From the IMG/VR virus record IMGVR_UViG_3300044846_005229, positions 1-64,000 of that record: a stretch of DNA of 64,000 nucleotides, one strand, 5' to 3'. The notes beneath the pieces were generated by a model. The model searched no databases, had not been told where the DNA came from, and saw only the letters and a list, made by a program, of their open reading frames with translations. Positions within the stretch are counted from its first letter, which is position 1. Each line of letters opens with the position of its first letter. A program made the translations under genes and the position numbers. Below, one piece after another: positions 4,465 through 63,742 of this stretch.

Positions 4465-4649
4465 TGCGAACTAGATGGGGGCACTGTCTAGTTTTACCCT
4501 TGTTGCGGTTAGTTTGGATAAAACATGGGGAATAGATGCCGGGTGTAAAAGTCCAGTTGTTGTTGGGCTGCTATAGCGAAATCCTTGGGACTTAGCCCAT
4601 TTGAGCAGGGACTGCTCCTGTCATTGACCCTTGAAACGCCATACCCCTA

Positions 4650-6017
4650 TTAGACTCCTTCATAATACATATTGATATACTTACGTGCGTTCTGATTGCT
4701 GACTTTCTCCCATACCCCCCTTCTAAATGATTCTGCCGAATGTTGAATGCCGAATGTTGCTATATCTTTAGCCTCACTCTTCGTCAGTCCGTCTTTTTCC
4801 ATTTCTGTCATCACTTTATTGAAATTCCTTTCCAACACATCAGCTTGTTTGCCTGTCGGGTAATTTGTCATCGCGAAGTTAGTCCCTGTCCATCCACCTA
4901 AAGCTTCAGATAAGGCTGCTTTCCAGTTTTTCTGAGATAACCCCAAATCAACAAACCTGGCCACCCCCTTATCATCAATAATTAAATTATCGCCCTTAGC
5001 ATCATTGTGGGCATACCCTAGTTTATGCAATTTTCCCATAGTGATATTGTAAGCGTCATCTTTGTCAATGCCATTGATCTTTTGAGGGGCCTTGTAAAGG
5101 GGGACTCCTGGAACAACTTCCATAGCAATCATACCTTTGTGGATGGTACCGTTATCCATGTTGCTATGGGCATTCTTTACGAATCTGGAGGCTATTAATT
5201 TGGGGCCCAAACCGACTTCCCCCAGTTTTTTAATTAAGGTAGCCTCAGTTCTACCGATATCCCCAACCTTAACGCCAATTTCATTAGGCATTCCATCCGA
5301 GTATCCAAGTAACTTCTTCGTGGGTATCTTCAGGAATGCTCCATAGCCCCCTGCACCCAATACCCGGGAGCCTGATCCTTCAACTGCGCTCCACTTTACC
5401 TTATCTGCTTTCTCTGAGCCATCAATGCTTATAGTGCCTTCGGGGCCTAGCCTTTTCATTTTGTCTAATAACTTACTGGCGGCTTCTCTGACTTTTCTTA
5501 CCTTATCTGCAGGGATATCACCATTCTTATGGGTAGTCATTGGGGCTGAGGGCCGAGTCCGTGCCACAGTTTCTTTAGGGGTCTTAGGAACTGGTTGATT
5601 CTTTAGTTTCTTGGCAGCATTTATTCTGCCTATAAGGGTGCGAAACCTTTGAATGGCTTGGCCAAAAAATAGTCCCAAGTTGTGTTCTTTGTCTTGAGTT
5701 TGCTTATTTATTGGTGGTGAATTCTTTCCCGTAGGGGGGTTCTTAATTGGGGGATTTTGGACAGGGGTAAAGGCAACTGGTTTGGTAACACCAAAAATCC
5801 TGTCCCTTACTTTTATCAGAGAACCCACAACAACATCAGGCAACTCGATAAGACAAGTCTTCACCCCTTCGATACAAGTTGCTGAGCAGCTTTTACCGAT
5901 AGAGCACCTTTTACGACCACCCCCGACAGCATTTGATTTGGACTTCAGAATCTCAGAACTCGATGGCGCATTGCCGGAGGGTGCCGCAAAGTTGAATTGT
6001 CCTTCACCATTTACCAC
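4650..6017 (-). CDS. Cys4-module protein with C-terminal protein-kinase-like domain (kinase 1)
   Basis: N-terminal CSIGKSCSATCIEGVKTC; kinase motifs GAGGYG (Gly loop), GVKVG (Lys), HNDAKGDN (catalytic loop), FVDLG (DFG-like). Confidence 0.75.
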   Translation of the reverse strand: MVNGEGQFNFAAPSGNAPSSSEILKSKSNAVGGGRKRCSIGKSCSATCIEGVKTCLIELPDVVVGSLIKVRDRIFGVTKPVAFTPVQNPPIKNPPTGKNSPPINKQTQDKEHNLGLFFGQAIQRFRTLIGRINAAKKLKNQPVPKTPKETVARTRPSAPMTTHKNGDIPADKVRKVREAASKLLDKMKRLGPEGTISIDGSEKADKVKWSAVEGSGSRVLGAGGYGAFLKIPTKKLLGYSDGMPNEIGVKVGDIGRTEATLIKKLGEVGLGPKLIASRFVKNAHSNMDNGTIHKGMIAMEVVPGVPLYKAPQKINGIDKDDAYNITMGKLHKLGYAHNDAKGDNLIIDDKGVARFVDLGLSQKNWKAALSEALGGWTGTNFAMTNYPTGKQADVLERNFNKVMTEMEKDGLTKSEAKDIATFGIQHSAESFRRGVWEKVSNQNARKYINMYYEGV

Positions 6018-6026
6018 GCGGTGCCT

Positions 6027-6206
6027 TTAACCCAGATATTGCCAAGCAGTGACTACATCCTCAGATACCAACCCATCAATATCCATCTTTTGAGCAGCGT
6101 CTAGGGCCCTAAGGGATTCAACCCGCTTGGCAGGGTCTCTGCGTAACTTTTTGTAACGCTCCATGAGCTTTTGGTATTTGTCGTCGTTGCTTAGTTGAGA
6201 TGCCAT
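6027..6206 (-). CDS. Small helical protein (59 aa), paralogue of 50001..50168
   Basis: Hand-translated MASQLSNDDKYQKLMERYKKLRRDPAKRVE...; below ORF-track cutoff; shares KYQKLM..YK..RRDPA with the 55-aa ORF at 50001..50168. Confidence 0.65.
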   Translation of the reverse strand: MASQLSNDDKYQKLMERYKKLRRDPAKRVESLRALDAAQKMDIDGLVSEDVVTAWQYLG

Positions 6207-6281
6207 TTGTTATGGGGGAGTTTTGAGTTATCAGGCTGTTAAGCCGCATACACCTATTATACCCCGTGGTCGCTGCCTTTG

Positions 6282-6407
6282 TCAACCTTCCTCTCGGTCT
6301 TCTTCGGATTTGATGAAATCCTTAAGGTCTTTGACATATACGCGAAGATCTTGGGCCTTTTGAAGATGCCAATGTTGTTTAGTTTTCAAGTAAAGCATCA
6401 TGTGGTT
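6282..6407 (-). pseudogene. 3' part of a 67-aa conserved cyanophage-type hypothetical gene interrupted by the IS605 element
   Basis: NHMMLYLKTKQHWHLQKAQDLRVYVKDLKDFIKSEEDREEG*; joins in frame with 7976..8053 when the IS is removed. Confidence 0.8.
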
Positions 6408-6600
6408 TTGACTTCCTCCCCGCCGTGAACGGCGGAGATTCCTTCTACGCTGCGCATGGGGATGCCTCAGCGATCGGGTGGGTTGGCGCTTCACAGCCTG
6501 CTGCCACCAAAGCGGTGGACTGATGCGTGGCTCCACGCCCGTTTCGACCCTCCGCCAGTCCGGCGGCGAGAATGTTCAAGGCAGCGTTGATGTCACGGTC
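6408..6600 (-). ncRNA. Predicted TnpB omegaRNA/reRNA scaffold (3' of tnpB to right end; guide is the flank AACCACATGATGCTTT...)
   Basis: Established for IS605 TnpB systems that the RNA overlaps the tnpB 3' end and right end; hairpins visible; 5' boundary is a guess. Confidence 0.55.
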
Positions 6601-7653
6601 GTGGACCGTTCCGCAGCTCGGGCACTGCCACTCCCGAATCGAAAGATCCTTCTTGCCGTCGTGATGCCCGCAGGTTGAGCACACCTGGCTGGTGGGGGGC
6701 CATCGGTTGATGACCACCACTTCACGCCCGTACTGCTCAGCCTTGGACTCCAGCAGGATCCGCAGCTGACGCCAGCCTGCATCGGCAATCGAGCGGGCCA
6801 GCTTCCTGTTCTTCAGCATCCCCGACACATTCAGGTCTTCCAGCACCACCGTTTGGTTCTCACGGATGAGGCGGGTCGAAAGCTGATGCTGATAGTCGAG
6901 GCGCCGATCGCCAACCTTGGCGTGCAGCTTGGCCACCTTGCGCCTGGCGATTACCAAGCGGTTGGAACCCCGTTGCTTGTGCTTCAGGTTGCGCTGTAGC
7001 CGCCGCAGTCGCTTGAGCGCAGAGCGCAGGAACTTCGGCGGGGCGAGCTTTTCACCGTCAGAAGTGACGGCGAGGGATACCAAGCCTAGGTCGATGCCAA
7101 CCGCCCTGCCATTCGCTGGCAAAGGAGTCGGCTCAATATCCACAACGAAGCTGGCGAAGAATCGCCCACTTGCATCGCGGATGACGGTGACGCTGCTCGG
7201 ATCCGAAGGCAGATCCCGGCTCCACTCAATCGGCACCGGGCCGATCTTGCTGAGCGTCAGCGTCCTCCCCCCTGTGCGGAACACATGGGACATGAAGCAA
7301 ACGGACTGCGCACCACGGCGCTTTTTGAAGCGTGGCGGCTTGACCTTCGCGCCCTTGCGCTTGCCTTTCAGGCTGGCCCACCAGTTGCGGTACGCCTGAT
7401 CGAGGTTGCGCACGGACTGCTGCAGCACCACATTGCTGGGCTCCGCCAGCCACTGCCGCTCTGGCGTCTGCTTGGCCTGCGTGATGCAGAGCTTGGCCAG
7501 GACGGGGTAGCTGGTCTTTTGCCCAGCGGCATACAGCTCACGGCTCTTGGCCAGGGCGTCGTTCCATACCACACGGGCGCAGCCGAACGCACGAGCCAGC
7601 GCCACCTGCTGATGCGGGTGGGGGTAGAGCCGGAAGCGGTAGCGTTGCTTCAT
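6445..7653 (-). CDS. tnpB: RNA-guided endonuclease TnpB
   Basis: MKQRYRFRLYP HTH start; RuvC-I GIDLG, RuvC-II VVLEDLNV, zinc finger CSTC/CPSC, RuvC-III HDRDINAA; all catalytic residues present. Confidence 0.95.
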   Translation of the reverse strand: MKQRYRFRLYPHPHQQVALARAFGCARVVWNDALAKSRELYAAGQKTSYPVLAKLCITQAKQTPERQWLAEPSNVVLQQSVRNLDQAYRNWWASLKGKRKGAKVKPPRFKKRRGAQSVCFMSHVFRTGGRTLTLSKIGPVPIEWSRDLPSDPSSVTVIRDASGRFFASFVVDIEPTPLPANGRAVGIDLGLVSLAVTSDGEKLAPPKFLRSALKRLRRLQRNLKHKQRGSNRLVIARRKVAKLHAKVGDRRLDYQHQLSTRLIRENQTVVLEDLNVSGMLKNRKLARSIADAGWRQLRILLESKAEQYGREVVVINRWPPTSQVCSTCGHHDGKKDLSIREWQCPSCGTVHDRDINAALNILAAGLAEGRNGRGATHQSTALVAAGCEAPTHPIAEASPCAA

Positions 7654-7682
7654 ACCAACCACCATACCAAACTTGGGGTGCA

Positions 7683-7949
7683 ATGGCGCAACCACCGCTT
7701 AGGCGAGGAAGGCACAGCGTTTCTCGGCTTGTCGTTCATTTGGTCTTTGTGGTCAAGTATCGGCGCAAGGCGCTGAGCGGGGCGGCATTGGATCGGATGC
7801 ACGAGGTCTGCCTGGGCATTGCCGAGCGGATGGGCTTCCAGCTGCTTGAGCTGAACGGCGAAGCAGACCATGTGCATCTGCTGGCGGGGCGCCCATCGAG
7901 CGTCTCAGGGAGTATGTGGAGTCTCAGGAAAAGCCGTCCTCAAGGACGG
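7683..7949 (+). pseudogene. tnpA: IS200-type Y1 transposase remnant (internal deletion plus frameshift)
   Basis: N-terminal ...HLVFVVKYRR...ADHVHLL (HUH) fused at ~7882/7883 to an out-of-frame C-terminal GGAPIERLREYVESQ (catalytic Tyr helix); the central part is missing. Confidence 0.85.
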
Positions 7950-7975
7950 GGTTTGTGTCCCAGAACAGCCCCGTT

Positions 7976-8053
7976 ATCAATGGCTTTAAGCAAGCTATGA
8001 ATTACTGGGTTCCACGGGCCCCTTATTGGGTTATCCCATTCTCTTTTTGACAT
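7976..8053 (-). pseudogene. 5' part of the IS-interrupted hypothetical gene
   Basis: MSKREWDNPIRGPWNPVIHSLLKAID, ending exactly at the TTGAT target. Confidence 0.8.
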
Positions 8054-8079: not shown

Positions 8080-8811
8080 TCACTTAATAACATTGAGACT
8101 TCTATTGAAGTACATCCTGCGGTCTTCCAACCCATTATAACCACCATTTACTCTGCGGGTAACTTGTTCTACGGTGGGATTCTTATCACATAGGGCATTC
8201 ATCCCATTGTTAAACCACCAAAAACCTGCCGAGGAAAATGGATACTTATCAGCTACATAATTAGCCCCTTGCATAACTTGTGGATCTTTGATAAAATTGG
8301 CAAAGTCCTGATAGTTTGCTCTACCTGTAAGCTGAATGTAACCGGCACCTTTGAAGCGGGGGCCATCCCCCGGTTGGGTATTTCCCAGATCTTTCCTACC
8401 TTCGTAATCCCAACCCGAAGCCAACTCTTTCTTCCAGCGACCACCACCAGATTCATGCGCAGTTTGACTAAGGAAATGACGAATTCTTTGCGGAGTTGTG
8501 ATTGCAAATTCTTCTAGACATCTATTAAGTTCGGTTACTTCAGAATCTAAAATCAAGCTTGGGGCACATTGCCAAATATATGCCAGAGACTCTTTGGAAA
8601 CATACTGCTTTGGGGTTGGTGGCCTAGTGGGAGTTGGTGGTTTGTAGGGTGTACGATATTTCCTTACCCAACTAGCCTCATCTGTAAATAGTTCGGGTTG
8701 TTTAGCAAAAACCGCCTTGGCAAAATCCAAAAAGGCACTTTCTTGAAGGGGGTTGTCTGTTCTACGGTTATTGACAAAATCTAAGAATTTCTCTGCAGTG
8801 AATTGGGGCAT
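8080..8811 (-). CDS. Endolysin, glycoside hydrolase family 19 (chitinase-like lysozyme)
   Basis: [41 protein letters not shown] motifs; likely start MPQF at 8811. Confidence 0.88.
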
Positions 8812-8864
8812 CTTGTTTCGGGTATCTATTGCTATTTTACCCGCCTCATCACATCCAGACCTAA

Positions 8865-9557
8865 CTACGTCAACCCTGGTCCTGCCCCTTGCTCCCCAGA
8901 TGGGGTACATTTATTTCGATTATTTTGGGCCATCTGCGTCTCAGACTGCTCAGGTTTAGGGTTCTTTGGCATTTCTTCTTGGGAGTCTACCTTTGGTTGT
9001 GCTGTGGGCACTTTAGAGTCTTCCCTTGGCTTCCTTGGTGGCCATACCTTGCCAGTAGTCAACCCCTGTGGTGGTTCTTCAAATGAACGCAAACCCTTTA
9101 ATTGCAGAGATCTAGGGCCAGGTTGTGGATTTTCGCTAGGGGTAGCTAAAGGCGGCAATTTACCGGACTCATTTTCTTTTAGTTTGCCTTGACTACCTTT
9201 TTGTTTCCCTGGCTTATTATCAATATCCATGGTTGATAAACCTTGGGCTCTGGTAGTTTTGTTTTCTTTGGGGGTTTCCCCACCGGTACTGCCCTTATCG
9301 AATTGCCTATCCCATGCACCGGACTCCAACATCTTAGAAACCCTATTTGCAGATTCCTGGGAGAATCCAATTGATTGTAAGGCCTCAGCATAGTCGCCCC
9401 TTTTGCAAGCAGATAATGAAATCGCAATTGCTTGCTTAGGATTTTCTACCACTGGGCCAGCCTTGCCAGCTTTGCCAAAACCAGAATGAAGTTTGCCAGC
9501 TTTGAACCGGCGCATTTCATCCCTGACGCAATTTTTATCGTCTGGATTGACTGGCAT
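8865..9557 (-). CDS. Hypothetical protein with DUF6496-like basic N-terminal motif
   Basis: [12 protein letters not shown]...KQAIAISLS motif; low-complexity C-terminus. Confidence 0.5.
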
Positions 9558-9563
9558 TTTTAA

Positions 9564-9773
9564 CTACCGAATTTCCAAAATTTTACCCTCTAGTTCCTCT
9601 ATGTAGTCTAATAGGGCCGTGGTCTGAGCCGATAGCTTTATTAGTAGACAAGAACTTTCAACAAGGTATTCTTCCAGCTCTTGTCTGGATAGAAGATTAA
9701 TTTTTTCCCTAATTTTGAAAGGAATTAGTTCCTTTTCTAGGGGTAATTCAATTTGTGGCCTTTGGAAGTCCAT
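9564..9773 (-). CDS. NblA-like small helical protein (possible phycobilisome degradation factor)
   Basis: 69 aa; ELPLEKE...LSRQELEEYLVE pattern resembles NblA (L.LEQ.F...MS.EQ...L.E); divergent. Confidence 0.4.
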   Translation of the reverse strand: MDFQRPQIELPLEKELIPFKIREKINLLSRQELEEYLVESSCLLIKLSAQTTALLDYIEELEGKILEIR

Positions 9774-10428
9774 GGGCTATTTGTTTAAGGGATTGAAATT
9801 TTTCTGATGCCCAGTGGTGTTGGTCTTCCCCCATGACTGCCTCACTGATGTAATCAACCATGAGATCCATCTCTTCGTCTGACAATACACTGAAAGCTTC
9901 AGCTAGATCATCTGATAAGAGCAGCGTCCGAGCCTCATCTGGGCTATAAACAAAGTCGGTATCTACCCAGTCTTCAGGTTGAGAGTCATAGGAGATGTGG
10001 TAGTTGTTTTCTGATAGTTGGCATTCCAGGACTCTAGCCTCGTCAATGTTTAACTTTTTGGCTATGTCGGTGTAGCTCATGTTTTCCTGTAAAAGCCCTA
10101 GGACCTCATTGCGATACTTGGCGATCCATCGGGGGGTTTTCACAAGCCTGGAATAATCTCGAAGAGCATGTTGGATGTATCCTCGGGCATTTTTCCAGGC
10201 GTAGGTGCTGAATTTAACGTGTTTGTCAGGGTCAAACCTGGTAGCAGCTACGCAAAGAGCAAAGTTTGCTATGGACTCTAGATCCTCCCTAGTGAGAGAA
10301 CCTGTATTGCCACCTGTTAAACACTTGGCTCCAAAAGCTAATCGACCAGCAATCCAGCTATGCTCTTCGACTAGTTTCTTTTGGTCTCTGGATAGTCCAG
10401 GGTACGATTTGTACCTCTTTTTTGTCAT
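9748..10428 (-). CDS. Phage RNA polymerase sigma-70-family factor (sigma A of window)
   Basis: Region 2 EDLESIANFALCVAATRFDPDKHVKFSTYAWKNARGYIQHALRD; HTH SYTDIAKKLNIDEARV. Confidence 0.85.
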   Translation of the reverse strand: MTKKRYKSYPGLSRDQKKLVEEHSWIAGRLAFGAKCLTGGNTGSLTREDLESIANFALCVAATRFDPDKHVKFSTYAWKNARGYIQHALRDYSRLVKTPRWIAKYRNEVLGLLQENMSYTDIAKKLNIDEARVLECQLSENNYHISYDSQPEDWVDTDFVYSPDEARTLLLSDDLAEAFSVLSDEEMDLMVDYISEAVMGEDQHHWASEKFQSLKQIAHGLPKATN

Positions 10429-12372: not shown

Positions 12373-13130
12373 TTTATTGAGTTCAGGAAAGTTGTCAAGG
12401 CTTGTAAGCTAGTTAGATTTAAATTTAACTCTGAATTGCAGGCCTTAGGCCCAACTATTCTACCATTTGGACTTTTTCTGTTTTTGTTAAGACTCCACCA
12501 CTCACGAATCCTACCGGAGTTGTCCGAAACGATAGCATAGTTGGGGTACCTTTTGCGAAGGAGTTCTTCAGACTCTTTTTTACCTTTTTTGTACTGGTTC
12601 CCCATTCTAGATAAAGACATTTTACGCTTGGCTTCGTCTGAAGCTTGTTTACCTTTTCTAGATTCTGACATTTTGCTCCTAGCTTCTGAGCTGTGTGTCC
12701 TGCCAAAAGAGGGATGGTCCTTCCCTCTACGCCCGTACATGGGATTTTTTTCCCCTTTATTATCAAACCCCATCTCTTTTAGAGCCTTTTTAACCCCCTC
12801 GGAGATAGCTAGTCTTTCTTTCTCTGTTCTAGGTCTACCCTTGTTATAGGCTTTAAGCCCAGTGGTGTCAAACTTGGTAGAAGTTTGGCAGGATCTGTTG
12901 ACGAACTCAGGGTTAGAAACAACTTCAAACACGTTCTGCCATTGTATTTCTGCTTTAGTTGCTGCTTCAGGTGAGTTAAATATTCCTAAAATAATCCTAG
13001 AGTCAGGGTTGAAAGTTTTATCAGAGAAGGACCCTAAATACTGGTCATAAAGGTCGTTAGTGCTGTGTTTTCCTATGTAATTTCGGCCATTATGGCTACC
13101 CTCATAGCTCAGATAAACTAAATGCCACAT
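12369..13130 (-). CDS. Free-standing GIY-YIG homing endonuclease with NUMOD3-like repeats
   Basis: HLVYLSY...NYIGKHST...YLGS and conserved Glu (KAEIQW); NPMYG/HPSFGRTHSSEARSKMS repeats. Confidence 0.85.
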   Translation of the reverse strand: MWHLVYLSYEGSHNGRNYIGKHSTNDLYDQYLGSFSDKTFNPDSRIILGIFNSPEAATKAEIQWQNVFEVVSNPEFVNRSCQTSTKFDTTGLKAYNKGRPRTEKERLAISEGVKKALKEMGFDNKGEKNPMYGRRGKDHPSFGRTHSSEARSKMSESRKGKQASDEAKRKMSLSRMGNQYKKGKKESEELLRKRYPNYAIVSDNSGRIREWWSLNKNRKSPNGRIVGPKACNSELNLNLTSLQALTTFLNSIK

Positions 13131-15884: not shown

Positions 15885-15926
15885 TATCCCAAGGGGGTTT
15901 GTAGGATTTAAGGTAAATTTACCCTA

Positions 15927-16502
15927 TCATCGAAAAAGATCGATAAGCTCAGGGTGCTTCTTCCGGAAAGATGTCGTGAACCTGGCCACGCAGCTACTTA
16001 CCGCTTGTTTGGTTACTCCAAACTCCTTTGCGATTTCGGATTGGGTCAACTTGGTGTGATTAAATAGGCCATACTTCGAGCAAATGATTTTGAACCCTTG
16101 CGTATCGGGTCCGCCGTAACGATCCAATAAAATTTTCTTAATTTGTGGAACATCGATTTTAGGGTTTATTTCACCCTCGTAGCCGACATCAACTTCATCA
16201 ATACTTTCTGTGTACTTAGGGTGCTTGTTTTCTTTCCTAGCAGCCCCCTGGATGGCCTCACGGACCTTCCAAAACATCCAAGTCTTGGGAACTACATTAC
16301 GGCTCAAATCAAAGGTTCTGATGCCATTGACGATGCCGATTCTCCCCTCTTGGACAAGGTCTTTCTCCATGTGTTTGGGCACCATGAATAAATACATATT
16401 CACAAGTTTGTGAACCAATGGTGTGAATTGAACGATAGTTTCCTCAATGGACTTCTCATCACCATTTACGGCTTTGCGGAAGGTTTCAATTGTGTAATCC
16501 AT
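15927..16502 (-). CDS. Phage sigma-70-family factor (sigma B of window)
   Basis: DLVQEGRIGIVNGIRTFD...WKVREAI (region 2); LTQSEIAKEFGVTKQAVS (region 4 HTH). Confidence 0.8.
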   Translation of the reverse strand: MDYTIETFRKAVNGDEKSIEETIVQFTPLVHKLVNMYLFMVPKHMEKDLVQEGRIGIVNGIRTFDLSRNVVPKTWMFWKVREAIQGAARKENKHPKYTESIDEVDVGYEGEINPKIDVPQIKKILLDRYGGPDTQGFKIICSKYGLFNHTKLTQSEIAKEFGVTKQAVSSCVARFTTSFRKKHPELIDLFR

Positions 16503-23421: not shown

Positions 23422-23479
23422 TTTGTTCTTTGAGTAGAATGTGTGGTCCCATGCTCTATTGCTTGGCACATTCATCTCT

Positions 23480-23507
23480 ATTGTAGTAAGGTGCCCCCGA
23501 AAGTCAA
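23480..23507 (-). promoter_or_regulatory. Sigma70-type promoter
   Basis: TTGACT-16 nt-TACAAT on minus strand. Confidence 0.6.
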
Positions 23508-23516
23508 CGGGCCTAA

Positions 23517-31520: not shown

Positions 31521-31527
31521 TTTACCC
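31521..31527 (-). promoter_or_regulatory. GGGTAAA putative phage late-promoter motif
   Basis: 24 nt upstream of ATG 31496; one of more than ten similarly spaced copies. Confidence 0.55.
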
Positions 31528-34280: not shown

Positions 34281-34308
34281 ATTGTAGCAAGTTGCCATGG
34301 AAAGTCAA
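34281..34308 (-). promoter_or_regulatory. Sigma70-type promoter
   Basis: TTGACT-16 nt-TACAAT on minus strand. Confidence 0.6.
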
Positions 34309-34873: not shown

Positions 34874-34880
34874 GGGTAAA
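34874..34880 (+). promoter_or_regulatory. GGGTAAA motif on plus strand
   Basis: 25 nt upstream of ATG 34906 of the only intact plus-strand gene. Confidence 0.6.
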
Positions 34881-40178: not shown

Positions 40179-40222
40179 CTGATTTTTTCATCTAGTATGG
40201 TTATTTTACCCGCACCGGGTGT

Positions 40223-45046: not shown

Positions 45047-45094
45047 TGCTAAAGAGCTTTCTATTTGAGCGCAAAGGCGCCCCTATTCTTACCC

Positions 45095-46731: not shown

Positions 46732-46760
46732 TTTAAGAGTCCATTATGTTTTCTTTTACC

Positions 46761-47151
46761 CTAATTGAAGTCGATGTTTTTTCTGGCCATAATGTCCATG
46801 GCTTCATTCCATTTAAATCGATTCGACCACCAGGAAGACGATGATGGTCCTTTAGCAATATTTTTTGCGTGACGGGCTTTGAATTTTTTACGCTTCATCT
46901 TCATGCGTTCAGATTCACCTTCTTTAGGTGACCCAGCGGTTTCTGCGCCCTTTTGGCCAAATTTTTTTCAATTCTTCCTCACCATCATGGCACCATTTGA
47001 CCACATGGCTTTTATCATCGCCAGGTTTTGTGGGGCGAGGTTTATTACAAGCCATTTTAGACTTATCGTAAGTCTCCCCAAACTGCTCAGCAAACATGTT
47101 ATAGAATGCCTCTAGGGCTTCATCGCTGAAATTTGCACTACCGTAAAGCAT
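46761..47151 (-). pseudogene. Basic conserved phage protein split by +1 frameshift in A7 run at 46962-46968
   Basis: Removing one A gives ...KSHVVKWCHDGEEELKKFGQKGAETAG...FKARHAKNIAKGPSSSSWWSNRFKW... (129 aa). Confidence 0.6.
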
Positions 47152-47567: not shown

Positions 47568-47657
47568 TTTATCTCAGGAAGTAATTAATGTTACCCTGTG
47601 CGCGACAAGGATGCAATGCCAGGGGGCTCAATTAACATAAAAAATACCGTGGGTCAC

Positions 47658-49604: not shown

Positions 49605-49629
49605 AAGAGTAGTTAGAAACTTATTTCTT

Positions 49630-49950
49630 TTACCCTTTGCCTTCGGTATTTGTATCTGAGTTGCTATCTAAACTATTGTCCTTATTGTTTGACTTACCGG
49701 AACTCCCCCTGGCAGCCATTCCCAAAGCAGCAGCGGGTACTAGCAACGCTAAAAAGACATTGGCTGCGGATTTGGCAGTTTCGGAGAAACTATCGGATAT
49801 TCCTAAGCAAAAAGCTGAGTAGGAGTCATTTGGTGATTTCCTTAGGTTATTGCGGCACGATATATTTTCATACCCTATCATGGCAATTTGTGCTACAAAA
49901 ATAGCCACCAAAGCTTTAACTAAAAATGCCCTCTCGTTGAATTCTTTCAT
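49630..49950 (-). CDS. Small membrane protein (two hydrophobic segments, two Cys)
   Basis: 106 aa; GGGTAAA 24 nt upstream. Confidence 0.55.
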   Translation of the reverse strand: MKEFNERAFLVKALVAIFVAQIAMIGYENISCRNNLRKSPNDSYSAFCLGISDSFSETAKSAANVFLALLVPAAALGMAARGSSGKSNNKDNSLDSNSDTNTEGKG

Positions 49951-50000
49951 TGCCCTACAGCGAATCTACTTAGATTTACCCTTTGCTGACTGGTTAATTC

Positions 50001-51379: not shown

Positions 51380-51406
51380 TGAAATTAGGGTATTTATGCT
51401 TTAAAT

Positions 51407-52039
51407 TTACCCAATTTGCTCTTTGTCGTTGTATTCCCCGTCTTCATCTTCATCATCTTCATCATCATCGTCGTCCTCATCATCATTACCGTCTTCATCA
51501 CTACCTTCGCTAAGGATCTCATCGATTAGGGTATCAATTTCATCTTCATTTAGTTCTTCTTCCCCTTCGACTTCGGACTCCCCATAAGGGTCTTCTTCGT
51601 ATTGAGTTTCGTTGTCGTTGTCGTCAGAGTCACTTTCTGCGTCATCGTCAGAATCGCCCTCATCCGAACCCCAAATCTCTTCAGAAAGGCGTTCAAATTC
51701 TTCATCGGTTAGGAATGTTGAGTTTTCATCTGAATCTTTAATATCATCGGCATCTTCGGCATCGTCATCAACTTCACCGGCACCATCGTCTGGGCTAGCC
51801 GGAAAATAATCGTCGGGATTGAATGGCTGGTTGGGTTTAAAGTCACGGGACATACCATCATTAGCCTTCCAAAGCCCGGTATGCTGAATCCAGGGAGAGG
51901 TATTATGGACTACGTTAGTTGGCAACCCATTAATAGGGTCAATTTCGTGATCTTCAGGGTTTGACAATTGAGCTGCATAAGCTGCGCGGAAAGCTTCAAT
52001 GGCATCCTGTTCAAAATCGCCGTTGATTCTATTCGTCAT
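51407..52039 (-). CDS. Highly acidic protein (Asp/Glu-rich C-terminal half)
   Basis: DDEDDDDDEDDEDEDGEY tracts; N-terminal FEQDAIEAF. Confidence 0.65.
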   Translation of the reverse strand: MTNRINGDFEQDAIEAFRAAYAAQLSNPEDHEIDPINGLPTNVVHNTSPWIQHTGLWKANDGMSRDFKPNQPFNPDDYFPASPDDGAGEVDDDAEDADDIKDSDENSTFLTDEEFERLSEEIWGSDEGDSDDDAESDSDDNDNETQYEEDPYGESEVEGEEELNEDEIDTLIDEILSEGSDEDGNDDEDDDDDEDDEDEDGEYNDKEQIG

Positions 52040-52210
52040 TTGTTTGAGGGGGTCGGTATTGGGGAGTTTAAGTGTTGGGGGGGGGTGTTGGGGGTGTTGG
52101 GCCCTGGTCCATTCAGCTTTCAGTTTTTAGGCTTATTTCAGCAAATGTTGAAAGTGTACCCCGAGACATACTTAGACCAATGATTATTACCCATCGTGCT
52201 GGCGGTGGGG

Positions 52211-53971: not shown

Positions 53972-54070
53972 TAGTCCTCGTACCTGCCTATGGGGAATTT
54001 AATAGATGACGGGGTATATAGTAGTCTATGAATAAGATTTACCCAGAGTCACACTAACTCCCCCCACCCA

Positions 54071-54892: not shown

Positions 54893-54937
54893 TTGTGAAA
54901 GGGAACTCTACGACCTTATTTTACCCTGCCCCCTGGC

Positions 54938-54959
54938 AAAAAGCCCCCGTTAGAGGGCT
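54938..54959 (-). terminator. Rho-independent terminator
   Basis: AGCCCTC-TAAC-GGGGGCT followed by TTTT on minus strand, just before the GGGTAAA motif of phoH. Confidence 0.6.
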
Positions 54960-56747: not shown

Positions 56748-58478
56748 TCAGAGCGATAACCCATAACCAGTGTCATCCCTGTTGAGGCGAGGTCTGGAAA
56801 AAGAGTCTGGACCGATAAAACCAGAACCAGAATCTAAATTATTGTAAAGTCCAGCCGAGGGTAAATTCCTCCCTACTCTACCAGTAGGTAAATTCGAATC
56901 ACCCAGGAATGGCCTTCTGTTTCCTCCGTTCCACCTCCTCGCTTGTATTATAGCATCTTGTACCCCACGGTCAACGGTGTCTAGCTTCATCGCATAGTAC
57001 GTCAGGGACCACACAAACGCATCCACCGAGTCATCGTGCTTAACGAAGGGGAATCCTGTTAGCTCCTTAATAAAACTATCCACCCATAACCCCTCAACGA
57101 GTTTAACCCTATCATTCTCTAGAAGTGGACAAACAGCTTCGAGTCTAACCGTTTTTGACCTAAGGGGTCTCATTTCTTCTACAGGTATTTTTGTTTCCCG
57201 TCTCAACATTTGTATCAAAGATTGGCCGGATGCTGCCTTTTCGATACAGATTACTTTTGGTTTGTAGAAGGAATGTAGTTGCTTAATAGATGCAATCAAA
57301 TCAGGGAAGCCCCATCTCCCTTTAACGATTTCCCTAATGTAAACAGTTCGGGGGTCCCTAGTTGAAATGCCAGCCACACAGACCGCAGTTTCGTCTGCAC
57401 CTTCTTTTTCAGAAAATGCACAGTCTACACCTAGCCATACTACATCTAGTGGTGGGCACTTTTCTTCTTCTATCCTAACTATCCACCCAGCCTTTACAAT
57501 TTGACCTTCTGCTGCAGTTGGAGTCCCTTGATAAAGGGCCGCAAATTTGGAACTGCCCATAGTTTTCTTTTGGGCTTCCAGCATATCAACCGAGAATGCC
57601 GGGTTATCAGGCCAATGGGACTCACCGATTTGCCTGCCTAAGGGGTCATCGACAGGGTCTTCACACAGGCCCGCAATATTCACCCATCTCCAACCTTCTG
57701 GGTTTTCTTCCTCATCATAGCTACCGTCCGATTCTAAAACCTGGCCATGCAAATCATTGGCATGAAACCTGGTCGCAATAATTAGACGGCAATAATTGTT
57801 AGTTTTACGTGTCGATGCCTCTTCTTGCCACCACGTTTGGAGACTCTCAAAAGCCCTGGCAGAAGCTGAGCTTTTCAGTGGGTCGTCGATTACCATGGCC
57901 CCCACACCTGGGCTAATAATGTTTACAGACCCTGCCGTATGGCCAGTCAACACACCACCGACAGAAGTAGGCAGGATGTATCCGCCACTAAGCATCTCAA
58001 ATTTAGAGTCCCTAGCAAAACCTTTCCAATCAGGGAAGATTTTCTTAAAGACAGGTGTCTTCAACATGCCGATAACTTCCTTATGGAACTTATTGGACAG
58101 TGATAAACCATAAGAGGCAATAACGTGTTGAGTTTCTTGATCTCTTCCTAGTAACCAAGCCACAAACATCGACGCCAGCATTGATTTACCAGATCGAGGG
58201 GGACAGGATACGATCAAGTTATGGTAGCGTTTATTTGCTAGATCCTCAAAACCACTGGCAATAATTTCATGGAAATCCGCGACTTTTAACGCACCACCCT
58301 TCATCAAGTCTGCAAAGGCCAGGAAACAATACCTGGAAGACTCAAACATGTAGTTCTGAATGACAGAGTTTGGTGCTTCTAAGACATTAAGATGATGTAA
58401 ACCCCTAATGTAATGGCGCCATGAGCTGTGTTCATCTAGTTGACTAGCGTGGTTTATTATCGGCCGTGGGAGTGTCAT
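56748..58478 (-). CDS. terL: Terminase large subunit
   Basis: SCPPRSGKS, MVIDDP, ATRFH, LGVDCAFS, IEKAASG, FPFVKHDDSVDA. Confidence 0.9.
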   Translation of the reverse strand: MTLPRPIINHASQLDEHSSWRHYIRGLHHLNVLEAPNSVIQNYMFESSRYCFLAFADLMKGGALKVADFHEIIASGFEDLANKRYHNLIVSCPPRSGKSMLASMFVAWLLGRDQETQHVIASYGLSLSNKFHKEVIGMLKTPVFKKIFPDWKGFARDSKFEMLSGGYILPTSVGGVLTGHTAGSVNIISPGVGAMVIDDPLKSSASARAFESLQTWWQEEASTRKTNNYCRLIIATRFHANDLHGQVLESDGSYDEEENPEGWRWVNIAGLCEDPVDDPLGRQIGESHWPDNPAFSVDMLEAQKKTMGSSKFAALYQGTPTAAEGQIVKAGWIVRIEEEKCPPLDVVWLGVDCAFSEKEGADETAVCVAGISTRDPRTVYIREIVKGRWGFPDLIASIKQLHSFYKPKVICIEKAASGQSLIQMLRRETKIPVEEMRPLRSKTVRLEAVCPLLENDRVKLVEGLWVDSFIKELTGFPFVKHDDSVDAFVWSLTYYAMKLDTVDRGVQDAIIQARRWNGGNRRPFLGDSNLPTGRVGRNLPSAGLYNNLDSGSGFIGPDSFSRPRLNRDDTGYGLSL

Positions 58479-60249: not shown

Positions 60250-61329
60250 TCATGGGAATATTGTATTTGACCCGCCGATATCGTAACCACCCGCATCATT
60301 AGGTTGTATGACTTGTGGGGTGCCCCCTAGGTCTTCATAATTACTATCTGTTATCCAGTTGGAGTTGGTATTATTTTGTCCCGTGGCGCCATAACCCAAT
60401 CGGTAATCTGGGGATTGATCCCCGGCTGGGTCATTATTCCAACCACTCAGACCTTTCCCAGATACACCATTATACCTTTGTGGAATACGCCATGTCCGCA
60501 TTATGCCGCGTTTAGTATCAATAGCAGAGTCCCCGTGTCCTGCCCGAATAGCAGTCATTTGCCGTTCGGCATCTAGTTGCTTAAGGGCCTCTACATAATC
60601 ACTTTTGATGTCATCTCTTTTACGGACTGTATCAAGGTAGTATCTAGCAATAATTAATGCGGTCCTTCTGCGACTACTGGTAATTAGTACCTTGCCAGCC
60701 TTCCCAGACTGCTCAATGTAAGAGTCAATTAGAGAATTAGCGTCTTCGATTGCCATCCTAAGTTTGACTATGTTGACACTAGTTGCAGAAGCATCATCGA
60801 TATTTGTCAGTTGAACGGCTTCCTTAAGGCCGAAGGCTGTGATGAAATCATCCGGGGATGCGCTACGTGGGTCTGAGCGGTTGGGTGTTAAAACTCCTGA
60901 GCGATCCTGATAAGGGAAGCCATAGCCGCCGATGGTTTGCCCTAGGTTAGACCCTTTTTGGGTGCCGTCGGTCTTTTCGTCAGGGGCTAACGTATTTTTA
61001 ACCGCAAACCTATAAAAGGCCCTGACGGCATTCCTCTTTTTGATTACATCATTTGAACCCGGTGGTATGGGCCCCCTGAGGCATACATTTAGGTCTAGTG
61101 GTGGCTCATACGAAACAAAGACTTCATCCCAAGGGGACAATGCAGAATCTAACCCCAGTGAAATCATCGTATCTGAGGAATACACTATGGTGTTCACCCC
61201 GTATTGACCGAAGCATACTGTGAAGCTGGAGACGGGGACCGGTATGGTGATGTCTAATGGCCCATCAAAGAATAGGACGACATTATTTGGGGTCGTTAAA
61301 GTGGATTCCTTTAATTTGGGTATTGCCAT
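60250..61329 (-). CDS. Head-tail adaptor (Mu gp36/DUF1320-like) with N-terminal Ig/SwmB-like domain
   Basis: QLTNIDD...LRMAIEDANSLIDSYI...IIARYYL...YVEALKQL. Confidence 0.6.
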   Translation of the reverse strand: MAIPKLKESTLTTPNNVVLFFDGPLDITIPVPVSSFTVCFGQYGVNTIVYSSDTMISLGLDSALSPWDEVFVSYEPPLDLNVCLRGPIPPGSNDVIKKRNAVRAFYRFAVKNTLAPDEKTDGTQKGSNLGQTIGGYGFPYQDRSGVLTPNRSDPRSASPDDFITAFGLKEAVQLTNIDDASATSVNIVKLRMAIEDANSLIDSYIEQSGKAGKVLITSSRRRTALIIARYYLDTVRKRDDIKSDYVEALKQLDAERQMTAIRAGHGDSAIDTKRGIMRTWRIPQRYNGVSGKGLSGWNNDPAGDQSPDYRLGYGATGQNNTNSNWITDSNYEDLGGTPQVIQPNDAGGYDIGGSNTIFP

Positions 61330-61745: not shown

Positions 61746-61747
61746 TG

Positions 61748-62149
61748 TTAAATCGCAGCGAGTACTGTGAATGTGCCATTCTGGGTTACAATTCTAGTCG
61801 GCCTAAACTCTATACCAGCGACAATCAGGCGGTCGGTATTTGTAATGTCATTTACCCTAAGGGTTTTTTCGCAGTTTACGGGTTGTTCGCAATTTACTGC
61901 CTTAAGAAAGTTAGTTTGGACCCCGACGCTGAACAAGTCCTTACTAAGCAAGCTATCACCTACAGAAAATGATACATCGGCAAATATGCTTCGAGACGCA
62001 TAGATTGAATCATAAACCGACAGATTATTAACTACACCAAGGGACTGATAAAAAACTGGAGCCAACGGGTTTGTGGCACTTTGGCCGAACCCTTGATAGA
62101 TTGGGAACCCTGGGTCATAATCAGCGTTGTAGTTACTTTCGAATGCCAT
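61748..62149 (-). CDS. Hypothetical structural protein
   Basis: 133 aa; TAATG coupling. Confidence 0.55.
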   Translation of the reverse strand: MAFESNYNADYDPGFPIYQGFGQSATNPLAPVFYQSLGVVNNLSVYDSIYASRSIFADVSFSVGDSLLSKDLFSVGVQTNFLKAVNCEQPVNCEKTLRVNDITNTDRLIVAGIEFRPTRIVTQNGTFTVLAAI

Positions 62150-63342
62150 TATTTAAAGGGATTTAGTGCGGAAGTCAAGGATGAGTAAACAGTGTTTATA
62201 GTACCTTGGGGATTTTGTAGCGTTTTTAGTATAAAATTAGTTTGAGGGGAATACGATTGTAGGGCCGCCAATGCAGTTGACTGAATAAATGTCGTGGGAT
62301 CTGATATGATGTTCCTTGCAGCCTCAGTGATAGAAAGGGCTTTTTGTGCTGTTTTTAAAGCGGTCTCCGCAAAGTTAATGCCAGGTATTGCCGGTAGGGT
62401 CGCTGGAATTTGTGGGGTCCATGCAGTAGTAAAAGAGCCTTTAATTTGGCCTTCTATGTACCCAGCATCCTTCCTCACAAAATCCATCGCAGCACCCATG
62501 TCTAGGAGCTTAGGGTCTTCGAAAGGGAATGGTTGTTTATCGCTCATCGGTGGGGGATTCCAATTAGCATCGACCCCAAATGGGTTACCAGTGGGCGCAG
62601 TCCCGAAAGCTGAGTATCTTTTGCACTGGCCATTGGATGTTGGAAAAGTACAATCACTTACCGTCCCGGCTTGAATGGGGTTTTGCCTATTTCCGGAAGA
62701 GTCTGGTGGCTGAATAGAGTCATTAGCCCCTGCGTGTCCATGTTGCAAGTCACAATGTCGTACCCAGATGTACTCGCCGTTTCTTTTCAGACAGACGCAT
62801 ACCCAGTCAGAACTCATGGGGCCATCTTCTTCTATGACAGAGCAACCACGGTTTTCCTTGCAAGGTGGGGGTAGACCCCCTGAGGGGTAAACTGGGAGGC
62901 GAGTCATGGAAGAGTTGTTAGGAATTGTCAACCCCCCTGCCGCTTGTTCTGTTAGGTTTTGTGGGTCGTAAAGGGTATCACTCAAGATGGCATAGTGGTA
63001 TTGGCCATTACTTAGTATGACATTTACTCTGGACCCTACCAAGTCCGGGGGCTGCTTACCGACAAATGCAGGAGAAGCGTCAATCCAATGTGAATATGAA
63101 TTTCCTTTACCGTCCCTTGGACCCGAAAATAAACCGGCCCCTTCAACCTCAGGTATATCATCCGGGTTCATAGCATCAAATAGTACCCTAACCCTACCGA
63201 GATTCTCAGGGTCATCGACATCGACTATTTTCCCCCTAACCATCCCCCTAGGTAAACCAGCATACTTAGCATTGGATTCTGCAAATAGCATCAACCTGGC
63301 TAAATTGTGAGTTAGCGGTATGCAACTGAGACTTTGTGCCAT
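62149..63342 (-). CDS. Baseplate spike/hub protein (gp5/VgrG OB-fold-like)
   Basis: GMVRGKIVDVDDPENLGRVRV OB-fold motif. Confidence 0.7.
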   Translation of the reverse strand: MAQSLSCIPLTHNLARLMLFAESNAKYAGLPRGMVRGKIVDVDDPENLGRVRVLFDAMNPDDIPEVEGAGLFSGPRDGKGNSYSHWIDASPAFVGKQPPDLVGSRVNVILSNGQYHYAILSDTLYDPQNLTEQAAGGLTIPNNSSMTRLPVYPSGGLPPPCKENRGCSVIEEDGPMSSDWVCVCLKRNGEYIWVRHCDLQHGHAGANDSIQPPDSSGNRQNPIQAGTVSDCTFPTSNGQCKRYSAFGTAPTGNPFGVDANWNPPPMSDKQPFPFEDPKLLDMGAAMDFVRKDAGYIEGQIKGSFTTAWTPQIPATLPAIPGINFAETALKTAQKALSITEAARNIISDPTTFIQSTALAALQSYSPQTNFILKTLQNPQGTINTVYSSLTSALNPFK

Positions 63343-63689
63343 TACTTATGCGCTGAGAATCTAGGGGTATTTCTAAGTTGGGTGCGCTTTGGCCGGGGTT
63401 TGACTATCTTTTGTTCCTCTTGTGCCACTTGTGCCACTTGTGTGTCACTAATCGGAAATTGAGTTAATTCATTTTTGTCTAACTCTGCAGTTTCCTCAGG
63501 CACTTTTGGTTTAGAGAGGGCTTTAAGAATTGGGCTTAGTTGCTTGGGGCTTACTTCCAAAATTGGTTCAGGGCTTTCGGGGGTAGCGGGGTTCCCAAGG
63601 TTCCCAAGGCCCTCAGCGCTATCGGAGGTAGCGGGGGTAGCGGGGGTTAAATCCTGAGTCTCATCCAAGTTTTTTCTTTTGGTGGTCAT
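63342..63689 (-). CDS. Hypothetical low-complexity protein
   Basis: 115 aa; GGGTAAA 24 nt upstream. Confidence 0.55.
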   Translation of the reverse strand: MTTKRKNLDETQDLTPATPATSDSAEGLGNLGNPATPESPEPILEVSPKQLSPILKALSKPKVPEETAELDKNELTQFPISDTQVAQVAQEEQKIVKPRPKRTQLRNTPRFSAHK

Positions 63690-63742
63690 AATAATTTGTT
63701 TGTATGATAGATTTTTACCCTGACTTTAGTGTTACCGGCCAA

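What the first reader, a model, noticed from the sequence alone, without database searches (positions are those of the whole stretch)
4493..63720. GGGTAAA motif at fixed distance upstream of genes: candidate promoter for a phage sigma factor
TTTACCC on the plus strand (GGGTAAA on minus) sits 23-28 nt before the start codon at 4493 (gene 4464), 9582 (9557), 31521 (31496), 40205 (40178), 46755 (46731), 49629 (49604), 49975 (49950), 51406 (51379), 54920 (54892) and 63714 (63689). Variants or other spacings occur at 15918, 45089, 47591 and 54038. It flips to the plus strand (34874) 25 nt before the only intact plus-strand gene. It differs from the T4 late TATAAATA box and has no obvious -35 element. 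Two phage sigma factors are encoded here.
Basis: partly seen in the sequence, partly recalled or inferred. Interest (0 to 1): 0.6.

Follow-up and report, generated by a model that had tools for sequence, protein, structure and literature searches.

The report
Late-gene promoter motif of a cyanophage
The short DNA word GGGTAAA(A) sits about 25 bases before many genes of this freshwater cyanophage and its relatives, and is most likely the promoter that a phage-made sigma factor uses to switch on virion genes, which is a well-supported but unsurprising kind of phage regulation.

Summary
Of the 33 GGGTAAA copies in the window, 13 lie 20-33 nt before a called ATG in the gene's orientation (0.33 expected, P about 4e-18). 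An unbiased k-mer scan ranks it first among words upstream of genes. The window belongs to a 110-kb uncultured freshwater cyanophage related to Synechococcus phage S-CBWM1. The same word is also the top upstream k-mer in S-CBWM1 and in three metagenomic relatives, and it tends to sit before orthologous genes.

Only about 10 bp are conserved (rGGGTAAAAnt), and there is no -35 box. The layout is a trio of G directly before a TAAAAT-like hexamer. Cyanobacterial group-3 sigma factors read this layout as an extended -10: the SigF -12 region GGGTAA and the SigJ J-Box GGGaAtacT.

The motif heads virion-gene operons, follows terminators and flips strand with the one opposite-strand gene. RNA-library contigs from three lake-water and freshwater studies end between it and the PhoH start codon.

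The best reading is a -35-less late promoter read by the phage's SigF-like sigma (9748-10428). This is not shown experimentally. The exact start site and which sigma reads the motif are inferred. It is a new member of a known kind.

The parts
4493..4499 (-). Motif site AAGGGTAAAACT, 28 nt before ATG 4464 (375-aa ORF, unknown function)
   Evidence: (PWM 17.2)
8836..8842 (-). Motif site, 24 nt before the in-frame ATG at 8811. This suggests the true start of ORF 8080-8910.
   Evidence: (PWM 15.3)
9582..9588 (-). Motif site, 24 nt before ATG 9557 (230-aa DUF6496 protein). It lies in the last codons of the small ORF that follows sigma 1. The word occupies the same place in relatives L015 and L017.
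15918..15924 (-). Motif site (GGGTAAATTT), 33 nt before ATG 15884 and directly downstream of the sigma 2 gene
31521..31527 (-). Motif site, 24 nt before ATG 31496. It heads an operon that runs into the 476-aa and 1328-aa (lysozyme-domain, tape-measure-like) genes. The ortholog S-CBWM1 gp2 also has the motif.
34874..34880 (+). Motif site on the plus strand, 25 nt before ATG 34906 of the only sizeable plus-strand gene. Its ortholog in S-CBWM1 (83719-84477) is also the odd-strand gene and also has the motif.
40205..40211 (-). Motif site, 26 nt before ATG 40178 (1379-aa tail fibre protein)
45088..45094 (-). Variant GGGTAAGAAT, 41 nt before ATG 45046 (1607-aa tail fibre protein). Weak PWM score.
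   Evidence: (9.3)
46755..46761 (-). Motif site, 23 nt before ATG 46731 (144 aa)
47590..47596 (-). Variant GGGTAACATT, 22 nt before ATG 47567 (138 aa)
   Evidence: (11.5)
49629..49635 (-). Motif site, 24 nt before ATG 49604 (238 aa). It overlaps the stop codon of the upstream gene.
49975..49981 (-). Motif site, 24 nt before ATG 49950 (106 aa). The ortholog S-CBWM1 gene at 69071 also has the motif.
51406..51412 (-). Motif site, 26 nt before ATG 51379 (399-aa kinase-like protein). The S-CBWM1 kinase ortholog also has the motif.
52186..52192 (-). Possible variant GGGTAATAAT, 146 nt before ATG 52039 (210 aa). One RNA-library contig ends in sequencing adapter at 52166, 26 nt downstream of the first G.
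54038..54044 (-). Motif copy (GGGTAAATCT), 66 nt before ATG 53971 (293 aa). Atypical spacing.
   Evidence: 11.5
54920..54926 (-). Motif site, 27 nt before ATG 54892 (PhoH). RNA-library contigs from three studies end at 54895-54901. The S-CBWM1 PhoH gene also has the motif.
54944..54956 (-). Intrinsic-terminator-like hairpin plus T-run, 17 nt upstream of the PhoH motif. The 55 nt upstream of the motif, which hold the hairpin, fold at -23.5 kcal/mol.
63714..63720 (-). Motif site, 24 nt before ATG 63689. It heads the operon that runs down to the head-tail adaptor gene 60250-61329.
9748..10428 (-). Sigma 1 (226 aa), a sigma-70-family factor. Region 2 scores above the Pfam cut-off and the best NCBIfam match is SigF (weak). 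The model shows sigma2, sigma3 and a short divergent C-terminal domain. It is the proposed reader of the motif and sits immediately (3 nt) downstream of the RNR large-subunit gene on the same strand.
15927..16502 (-). Sigma 2 (191 aa), a compact sigma with region 2 plus a region 4 helix-turn-helix (ECF-like length). Its role is unknown.

Best explanation
GGGTAAA(A) is the core of a compact phage promoter with no -35 box.

Proposed reading (inferred):
- The three G occupy -15 to -13, as an 'extended -10'.
- TAAAAn is the -10 hexamer, with its second-position A at -11.
- Transcription starts about 7 nt further on, often at a C-A step.
- This gives short leaders of 12-25 nt that are A-rich, G-poor and mostly lack a Shine-Dalgarno sequence. 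That explains the near-fixed 23-28 nt distance to the ATG.

Proposed mechanism (inferred): host core RNA polymerase carrying the phage-encoded SigF-like sigma 1 (9748-10428) reads the motif. Sigma 1 lies directly downstream of the ribonucleotide-reductase genes on the same strand, has no motif of its own upstream, and is probably made with them. The motif-driven promoters then switch on virion-gene operons (tail fibres, baseplate, tape-measure, neck) and a few auxiliary genes (PhoH, a kinase).

Shown here: the motif's enrichment, orientation, spacing, conservation across the clade, association with structural genes, and resemblance to the promoters of cyanobacterial group-3 sigma factors.

Not shown: the start site, the timing, and which sigma reads it.
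For: 1. Enrichment and spacing. 13 of 33 copies lie 20-33 nt before an ATG in sense orientation, against 0.33 expected. It is the top 7-mer upstream of genes on the whole contig, at 20 genes against 1.38 expected, P = 7e-17.

2. Clade conservation. The same word is the top upstream k-mer in S-CBWM1 (GGGTAAAA before 22 genes against 1.06 expected). It is also top in three metagenomic relatives whose sigma 1 is about 62% identical (16 against 1.06). Among 56 ortholog pairs, motif presence is shared more often than chance (odds ratio 6.2, P = 0.005).

3. Places that need a promoter. It flips strand with the lone opposite-strand gene, both here and in S-CBWM1. It sits right after terminator hairpins at 54944-54956 and at 71544 on the window's numbering, which is beyond the window on the same contig.

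4. Sequence logic. Only about 10 bp are conserved and there is no -35 element. A GGG trio directly precedes an A-rich hexamer whose second position is an invariant A. Synechocystis SigF promoters have GGG at -15 to -13 and GGTAA at the -12 region (PMC2532724). The Nostoc SigJ J-Box GGGaAtacT is an extended -10 with a weak -35 (PMC6495340).

5. Sigma 1. Its best curated family match is SigF, NF005644, though weakly. It has sigma2 and sigma3 domains.

6. Outgroup. S-TIM5 has a single sigma gene, which is sigma-1-like. It carries a related but different word, GTTTAAAG, 26-31 nt before the start codons of structural genes. Motif and sigma therefore differ together.

7. Gene class in S-CBWM1. The motif directly precedes 8 of 22 annotated virion or lysis genes and 0 of 15 DNA-metabolism genes (P = 0.012). 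Structural genes lie much closer downstream of a motif-headed start (P = 2e-5).

8. RNA-library contigs. Contigs from three lake-water and freshwater studies end at 54895-54901, between the motif and the PhoH ATG. One contig ends in adapter at 52166, the same 26-nt offset from a variant motif that lies 146 nt from its ATG.
Against: - No start site has been mapped. The contig ends lie about 10 nt downstream of the start predicted from an extended -10 reading. I attribute this to the usual loss of 5' ends in RNA-seq (my own knowledge, not tested). A contig cannot prove an RNA end, and DNA carry-over in these libraries cannot be excluded.
- One metatranscriptome contig runs through the sites at 49629 and 49975. 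These would then be internal promoters in a read-through unit, or weak ones.
- The T expected at -7 is present in only 6 of 13 window sites, against 18 of 26 in S-CBWM1.
- Sigma 1 matches SigF only weakly (47.6 bits against a cut-off of 261).
- Some motif-headed units include non-structural genes such as PhoH and kinases, and possibly the S-CBWM1 DNA polymerase operon. 'Late' is therefore an inference from gene content only.
Confidence: 0.65

Rival explanations
1. The motif is a promoter with the same extended -10 architecture, but it is read by a host group-3 sigma factor (SigF/SigJ type). The two phage sigmas would do something else, such as middle transcription or host takeover.
For: The motif is nearly identical to the experimentally defined host SigF -12 region (GGG plus TAAGTT) and close to the SigJ J-Box. 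The match of phage sigma 1 to SigF is weak.
Against: The motif co-occurs with the phage sigma in every lineage examined. It changes to GTTTAAAG in S-TIM5, whose sigma-1-like protein is only 29% identical. Relying on a host stress or motility sigma of limited abundance for all virion genes would be unusual. The host and its set of sigma factors are unknown.
Confidence: 0.12
2. The motif acts in RNA rather than DNA. It would be a site for an endoribonuclease that cuts polycistronic transcripts just before each gene, or a ribosome-loading or translation-enhancer element at a fixed distance from the AUG.
For: The spacing to the ATG is tight (23-28 nt) and the motif is strictly in sense orientation. 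The leaders lack Shine-Dalgarno sequences. One RNA contig reads through two sites.
Against: The motif is present before the lone opposite-strand gene and directly after terminators, where no upstream transcript would exist. A variant 146 nt from its ATG still shows an RNA-contig end at the same offset from the motif. The word fits a -10 element with an invariant A at the position of -11. It has no evident complementarity to the anti-Shine-Dalgarno sequence (my own reading).
Confidence: 0.08
3. The motif is the binding site of a phage activator (like the T4 MotA box) or an upstream promoter element. The real -10 would be the weak CATAnA/TAGAT-like element 12-14 nt downstream, read by host SigA.
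For: There is a weak A/T signal 13-14 nt after the motif. S-TIM5 shows a two-part word, GTTTAAAG followed by TATATTAG. The contig ends at 54900/54901 and 52166 would then be near-exact starts.
Against: The second element carries only 0.3-0.4 bits and is nearly absent in S-CBWM1. Leaders would be about 6 nt or shorter. At the 52192 site no usable -10 lies at the required place. The C-A step is equally well explained as the initiation site.
Confidence: 0.07

Closest known systems
Cyanobacterial group-3 sigma promoters: the Synechocystis SigF '-12 region' (GGGTAAGTT in pilA1) and the Nostoc SigJ J-Box (GGGaAtacT)
   Same: A conserved trio of G directly before a hexamer with a near-invariant A at its second position. 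The -35 is weak or absent. Information is concentrated in about 9-10 bp. The phage's sigma 1 finds SigF as its best curated family.
   Different: The hexamer here is TAAAA(T), not TAAGTT or aAtacT. No TAGGC -32 element or long AG-rich tract was seen. The targets are virion genes.
T4-type late promoters (TATAAATA, read by gp55 with gp33 and the sliding clamp), also used by T4-like cyanophages
   Same: A -35-less, -10-only late promoter read through a phage-encoded sigma-like factor, placed a short distance before late genes.
   Different: The consensus is different and has the G trio. The sigma here is a full-length sigma-70-family protein with a region 2 Pfam match, not a minimal gp55. No evidence was sought for coupling to a clamp or co-activator.
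Sigma cascades of Bacillus phages (SPO1 gp28, then gp33/gp34; my own knowledge) and SigF/SigG-like sigmas of Bacillus phages
   Same: The phage carries more than one sigma gene, and phage-specific promoter words mark temporal classes. Bacillus phage sigmas are the only other GenBank phage matches to sigma 1.
   Different: Those promoters have both -35 and -10 elements with other sequences. Here only one phage-specific word was found, and no second motif for sigma 2.
Cyanophage S-TIM5 (outgroup, seen here)
   Same: A single sigma-1-like sigma and a conserved word with a TAAA core 26-31 nt before the ATG of structural genes.
   Different: The word is GTTTAAAG followed by TATATTAG, not GGGTAAAA. 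The sigma is only 29% identical over region 2.

Membership tests
Extended -10 promoter of the cyanobacterial group-3 sigma (SigF/SigJ) type | A conserved G trio immediately upstream of the -10 hexamer | tested here: met
   G is 17/19 at the first position. The next two are part of the enriched word. AGGTAAA is the only frequent alternative.
Extended -10 promoter of the cyanobacterial group-3 sigma (SigF/SigJ) type | Hexamer with a near-invariant A at position 2 (-11) and T at position 6 (-7) | tested here: inconclusive
   A at the -11 position lies inside the GGTAAA word that was used to pick the sites, so its invariance there is by construction; the k-mer scans show the whole word is what is enriched. 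T at the -7 position is 18/26 in S-CBWM1 but only 6/13 in the window's sites.
Extended -10 promoter of the cyanobacterial group-3 sigma (SigF/SigJ) type | -35 region weakly conserved or dispensable | tested here: met
   No position upstream of the G trio exceeds 0.4 bits in 19 and 26 aligned sites. No enriched two-part word was found.
Extended -10 promoter of the cyanobacterial group-3 sigma (SigF/SigJ) type | Transcription starts about 6-8 nt after the hexamer | tested here: inconclusive
   Only assembled RNA-library contigs were available. Their ends lie 25-31 nt after the first G, about 10 nt beyond the predicted start.
Extended -10 promoter of the cyanobacterial group-3 sigma (SigF/SigJ) type | Activity depends on a group-3 sigma factor | not testable with these tools
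   This needs in vitro transcription or genetics.
T4-type late promoter | TATAAATA consensus at -10 | tested here: not met
   The enriched word is GGGTAAAA. No TATAAATA-like word appears among the top upstream k-mers.
Sigma-70 family (sigma 1, 9748-10428) | Region 2 (binds core polymerase and recognises the -10) | tested here: met
   Pfam Sigma70_r2 at 32.6 bits against a cut-off of 24. It aligns with SigA regions 2-3 in PDB entries.
Sigma-70 family (sigma 1, 9748-10428) | Region 4 helix-turn-helix that reads the -35 | tested here: inconclusive
   There is no Pfam or NCBIfam region 4 match. The model has a short four-helix C-terminal domain (163-218), and Foldseek aligns nearly the whole chain to full sigmas.
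Cyanobacterial SigF (NCBIfam NF005644) | Score above the curated family cut-off | tested here: not met
   47.6 bits against a cut-off of 261. It is the best hit but only a distant relative.

The most novel reading that the evidence does not exclude
This cyanophage lineage may have captured a cyanobacterial group-3 (SigF/SigJ-like) sigma factor together with its GGG-extended -10 promoter layout. Phage late genes and the host's SigF/SigJ regulon (type IV pili, motility, secretion) would then share a promoter language. The phage sigma could fire host J-Box or pilA-type promoters during infection. Conversely, host SigF/SigJ activity could set how readily the phage's late genes are expressed.
Probability: 0.15. 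Interest if true: 0.65.

Novelty: new member of a known kind. Interest (0 to 1): 0.45.

Why it matters
It gives a concrete, testable promoter model for a widespread group of freshwater and estuarine cyanophages. Hundreds of sigma-1 homologs turned up in metagenomes, and the group has a cultured member, S-CBWM1.

Practical uses:
- The motif can correct start-codon calls, for example at 8811.
- It can define operons and mark virion-gene modules made of proteins with no recognisable families.

It also links a phage late-transcription system to the little-studied group-3 sigma factors of cyanobacteria. This offers a simple system, one small sigma and a 10-bp promoter, for studying how the G trio is read. 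The principle itself, a phage sigma plus a -35-less late promoter, is textbook, so the surprise is modest.

Tried and rejected
- A near-identity DNA search against GenBank phages found nothing.
- Sigma-based scans of IMG/VR returned only strains of the same species and S-CBWM1 itself.
- The genome-collection scan found three contigs in MAGs. The two that are 48% identical in sigma 1 are probably mis-binned phage contigs, too short for a motif test; one has the word just after sigma 1.
- A search for a second, two-part promoter word that could belong to sigma 2 found nothing beyond noise.
- A generic sigma-70 consensus scan is not enriched overall. A few perfect intergenic matches do look real, for example 6285-6256.
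- I first read the weak downstream CATAnA signal as a possible true -10. I rejected this because of its low information, the resulting 6-nt leaders and the 52192 site.
- The RNA contig end at 51410, inside a motif, is most likely an assembly break next to a masked repeat (51433-51492). I did not use it.
- An alignment of the orthologous promoter after sigma 1 overlaps coding sequence, so it is not clean footprinting.
- My guess that the GC-rich block at 6-8 kb was psbA was wrong. It is a TnpB gene.
- The original S-CBWM1 paper (Xu et al. 2018, doi 10.1111/1462-2920.14326) is not held, so I could not check whether it already reports this motif. None of the accessible papers that cite S-CBWM1 mention it.

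Full report
**What the window is**

The window is bases 7767-71766 of a 110,489-bp IMG/VR virus contig (45.5% G+C, CheckV estimate 39% complete). My ORF model genes on the contig, 111 of them on the minus strand.

- The genes include ribonucleotide reductase, a split primase, tail fibres, a large terminase, PhoH and a head-tail adaptor.
- The nearest named phage is Synechococcus phage S-CBWM1 (genus Aokuangvirus, 139 kb). TerL is 54% identical and sigma 47% identical, and there is no DNA-level match.
- RNA libraries that hold pieces of the window come from lake-water and freshwater samples and one freshwater-sediment sample.
- This is therefore an uncultured freshwater relative of an estuarine cyanophage.

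**Check of the observation**

- GGGTAAA occurs 33 times, against 13.3 +/- 3.3 in shuffles.
- All ten listed minus-strand sites exist, with 23-28 nt between motif and ATG. The plus-strand copy at 34874 is 25 nt before ATG 34906.
- I added 8836, which is 24 nt before an internal ATG at 8811 that is probably the real start.
- I placed the variants at 45088-45094 (GGGTAAG) and 47590-47596 (GGGTAAC).
- Thirteen of the 33 copies fall in the 1% of positions that are 20-33 nt before a called ATG in sense orientation (0.33 expected, P = 4e-18). Of 140 composition-matched permutations, only shifted versions of the same word do this.
- Without any prior, GGGTAAA is the most enriched 7-mer in the 60 nt before the 118 genes (20 genes against 1.38 expected, P = 7e-17). 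GGGTAAAA is the most enriched 8-mer.
- The copies inside genes or on the antisense strand are about as many as chance predicts.

**Anatomy**

I aligned 19 sites from this contig and 26 from S-CBWM1.

- Information is confined to about ten positions, r-GGG-TAAA-A-(T/c)-(t). Nothing upstream exceeds 0.4 bits, so there is no -35 element.
- There is a weak A (often C-A) 13-14 nt after the GG.
- If the three G are read as -15 to -13 and TAAAAn as the -10 hexamer, the start falls on that C-A step.
- The leaders would then be 12-25 nt (median 16), 39% A and 14% G, mostly without a Shine-Dalgarno sequence.
- That is enough to explain the near-fixed distance to the ATG.

**Related genomes**

- The same unbiased scan on S-CBWM1 (51.6% G+C, proteins 30-60% identical) gives the same word at the top. 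GGTAAAA precedes 28 genes against 1.49 expected, and GGGTAAAA precedes 22 against 1.06.
- The protein word search found at least 771 sigma-1 homologs in metagenomes.
- Three 20-kb loci from contigs whose sigma 1 is about 62% identical are syntenic with the window, and GGGTAAAA is again the top word (16 against 1.06).
- Among 56 reciprocal-best ortholog pairs between this contig and S-CBWM1, motif presence is shared more often than chance (10 both, 5 and 10 single, 31 neither; odds ratio 6.2, P = 0.005).
- The shared cases include PhoH, the tail fibre/BNR protein, a kinase, the first genes of the neck and baseplate modules, and the single opposite-strand gene of each genome.
- In S-CBWM1 the motif directly precedes 8 of 22 annotated virion or lysis genes and none of 15 DNA-metabolism genes (P = 0.012). 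Structural genes lie far closer downstream of a motif-headed start (P = 2e-5).

**Why a promoter rather than an RNA signal**

- The motif appears where a new transcript must begin. It precedes the lone opposite-strand gene in two genomes. It also lies 17 nt after a strong terminator hairpin at 54944-54956, and after another at 71544 on the window's numbering, which is beyond the window on the same contig.
- RNA-library contigs from three lake-water and freshwater studies cover PhoH and end at 54901, 54900 and 54895. These ends lie between the motif (54920-54926) and the ATG (54892). A fourth contig end marks the 3' side just past the stop codon.
- A contig over the 210-aa gene ends in Illumina adapter at 52166. 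This is 26 nt after the first G of a variant motif (GGGTAATAAT, 52183-52192) that is 146 nt from its ATG. The RNA boundary there follows the motif, not the start codon.
- These ends are about 10 nt beyond the start I predict. I attribute that to the usual loss of extreme 5' ends in RNA-seq (my own knowledge). Contigs cannot prove an end, and DNA carry-over cannot be excluded.
- One contig reads through the sites at 49629 and 49975, so some sites lie inside longer units.

**What it resembles**

- In Synechocystis, the group-3 sigma SigF needs a '-12 region' GGTAA, with GGG at -15 to -13 in the pilA1 promoter (PMC2532724).
- In Nostoc, SigJ-dependent promoters share the J-Box GGGaAtacT. The authors interpret it as an extended -10, with the G trio read by sigma domain 3 and a weak -35 (PMC6495340).
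- The phage word has the same layout.

**The two sigma factors**

- Sigma 1 (226 aa) has a region 2 match above the Pfam cut-off. Its best curated family is SigF, though far below that family's cut-off.
- Sigma 1 aligns with SigA regions 2-3 up to the start of 4.1.
- Its AlphaFold model (pLDDT 74) shows sigma2, sigma3, a disordered linker and a short four-helix C-terminal domain. Foldseek still aligns nearly the whole chain with full sigmas. I therefore do not claim that region 4 is missing, only that it is short and divergent.
- Sigma 2 (191 aa) is a compact sigma with region 2 plus a region 4 helix-turn-helix.

**Which sigma reads the motif**

- The outgroup cyanophage S-TIM5 has one detectable sigma gene. 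It is sigma-1-like (29% identity over region 2, with no similarity to sigma 2).
- Its structural genes carry a different but related word, GTTTAAAG followed by TATATTAG, 26-31 nt before the ATG.
This result also shows that my pipeline does not return GGGTAAA by default.
- Sigma 1 lies directly downstream of the reductase genes on the same strand and has no motif of its own.
- In S-CBWM1, but not here, sigma 2 has the motif.
- I found no second phage-specific word for sigma 2.
- Good matches to the host-type TTGACA/TATAAT consensus lie in several intergenic regions before non-motif genes, for example 6285-6256 and 15049-15022. This fits early transcription by the host's primary sigma.

**Verdict**

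The likely mechanism is a -35-less, GGG-extended -10 promoter read by a phage SigF-like sigma, driving virion operons.

- The sequence facts are shown.
- The start site, the timing and the identity of the sigma are inferred.
Each is less likely but not excluded.
- I could not read the original S-CBWM1 paper to see whether the motif was already reported.

Noticed in passing
window 6445-7695 (-), inside the block 6001-8000: A 416-aa ORF is a TnpB (IS605 OrfB, Cas12f1-like TNB and HTH domains). It sits in a block of 58.7% G+C, against about 45% elsewhere. It looks like a recently acquired IS200/IS605-type element from a GC-rich genome, which may hint at the host.
   Followed up: partly
window 20378-21454 (-): Three group I introns (Rfam RF00028, 58-83 bits) lie in a row between the two halves of the DNA primase gene (19408-20391 and 21423-22355). 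'gatatagtc' cores, a sequence I take from my own knowledge to be intron-like, recur elsewhere on the contig, at about 72.2-77.9 kb on the window's numbering (beyond the window).
   Followed up: partly
window 55274-56692 and 56748-58478 (-): Two adjacent ORFs both match large-terminase families. The 576-aa one is the S-CBWM1 TerL ortholog. The 472-aa one is a weaker second copy.
   Followed up: no
window 12369-13130 (-): A homing-endonuclease gene sits between the small and large ribonucleotide-reductase subunit genes. S-CBWM1 instead has an intein inside the large subunit.
   Followed up: no
window 6285-6256, 15049-15022, about 23476-23516, about 34260-34304 (-): Near-perfect host-type sigma-70 promoters (TTGACA, 16-18 nt, TATAAT, some with TG) lie in intergenic regions before genes that lack the phage motif. 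They are likely early promoters.
   Followed up: partly
L004-L006 (S-CBWM1), e.g. record positions about 26630, 65855, 126605, 132310, 135670: A conserved element of about 30 bp (core TGTGAAAGATT...CACTGTCCCA) lies directly upstream of the motif at five S-CBWM1 promoters (NMN adenylyltransferase, PhoH, the portal region, a virion protein, gp177). GGGCGGTAAACCGCCC hairpins followed by TTTAC sit 17 nt before some motifs. Together with TAAAAT that spacing would make a sigma-70-like promoter geometry.
   Followed up: no
L018 (S-TIM5, NC_019516.2 80001-130000): The structural genes of S-TIM5 carry their own conserved upstream word, GTTTAAAG plus TATATTAG, 26-31 nt before the ATG. The genome has a single sigma-1-like sigma gene.
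   Followed up: partly
window 50217-51197: RNA-library contigs of related strains skip 979 bp here and have 89 other letters instead. Most of the 399-aa kinase-like gene is therefore replaced in some relatives. All three runs with a contig reaching it (X1, X3, X4) also diverge from the window at 49003.
   Followed up: no
L019, L020 (contigs CALGUT010000403.1, CALGUV010000018.1): Contigs binned into Opitutales and Microbacteriaceae MAGs encode a sigma-1 homolog (48% identity), with the motif just downstream. They are probably phage contigs that were mis-binned.
   Followed up: no
IMG/VR contigs behind L007-L012: Near-identical strains occur as contigs of 127-134 kb and one of 279 kb. The 279-kb record may be a concatemer, and it may explain the 39% completeness estimate for a genome that is probably about 130-140 kb.
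   Followed up: no
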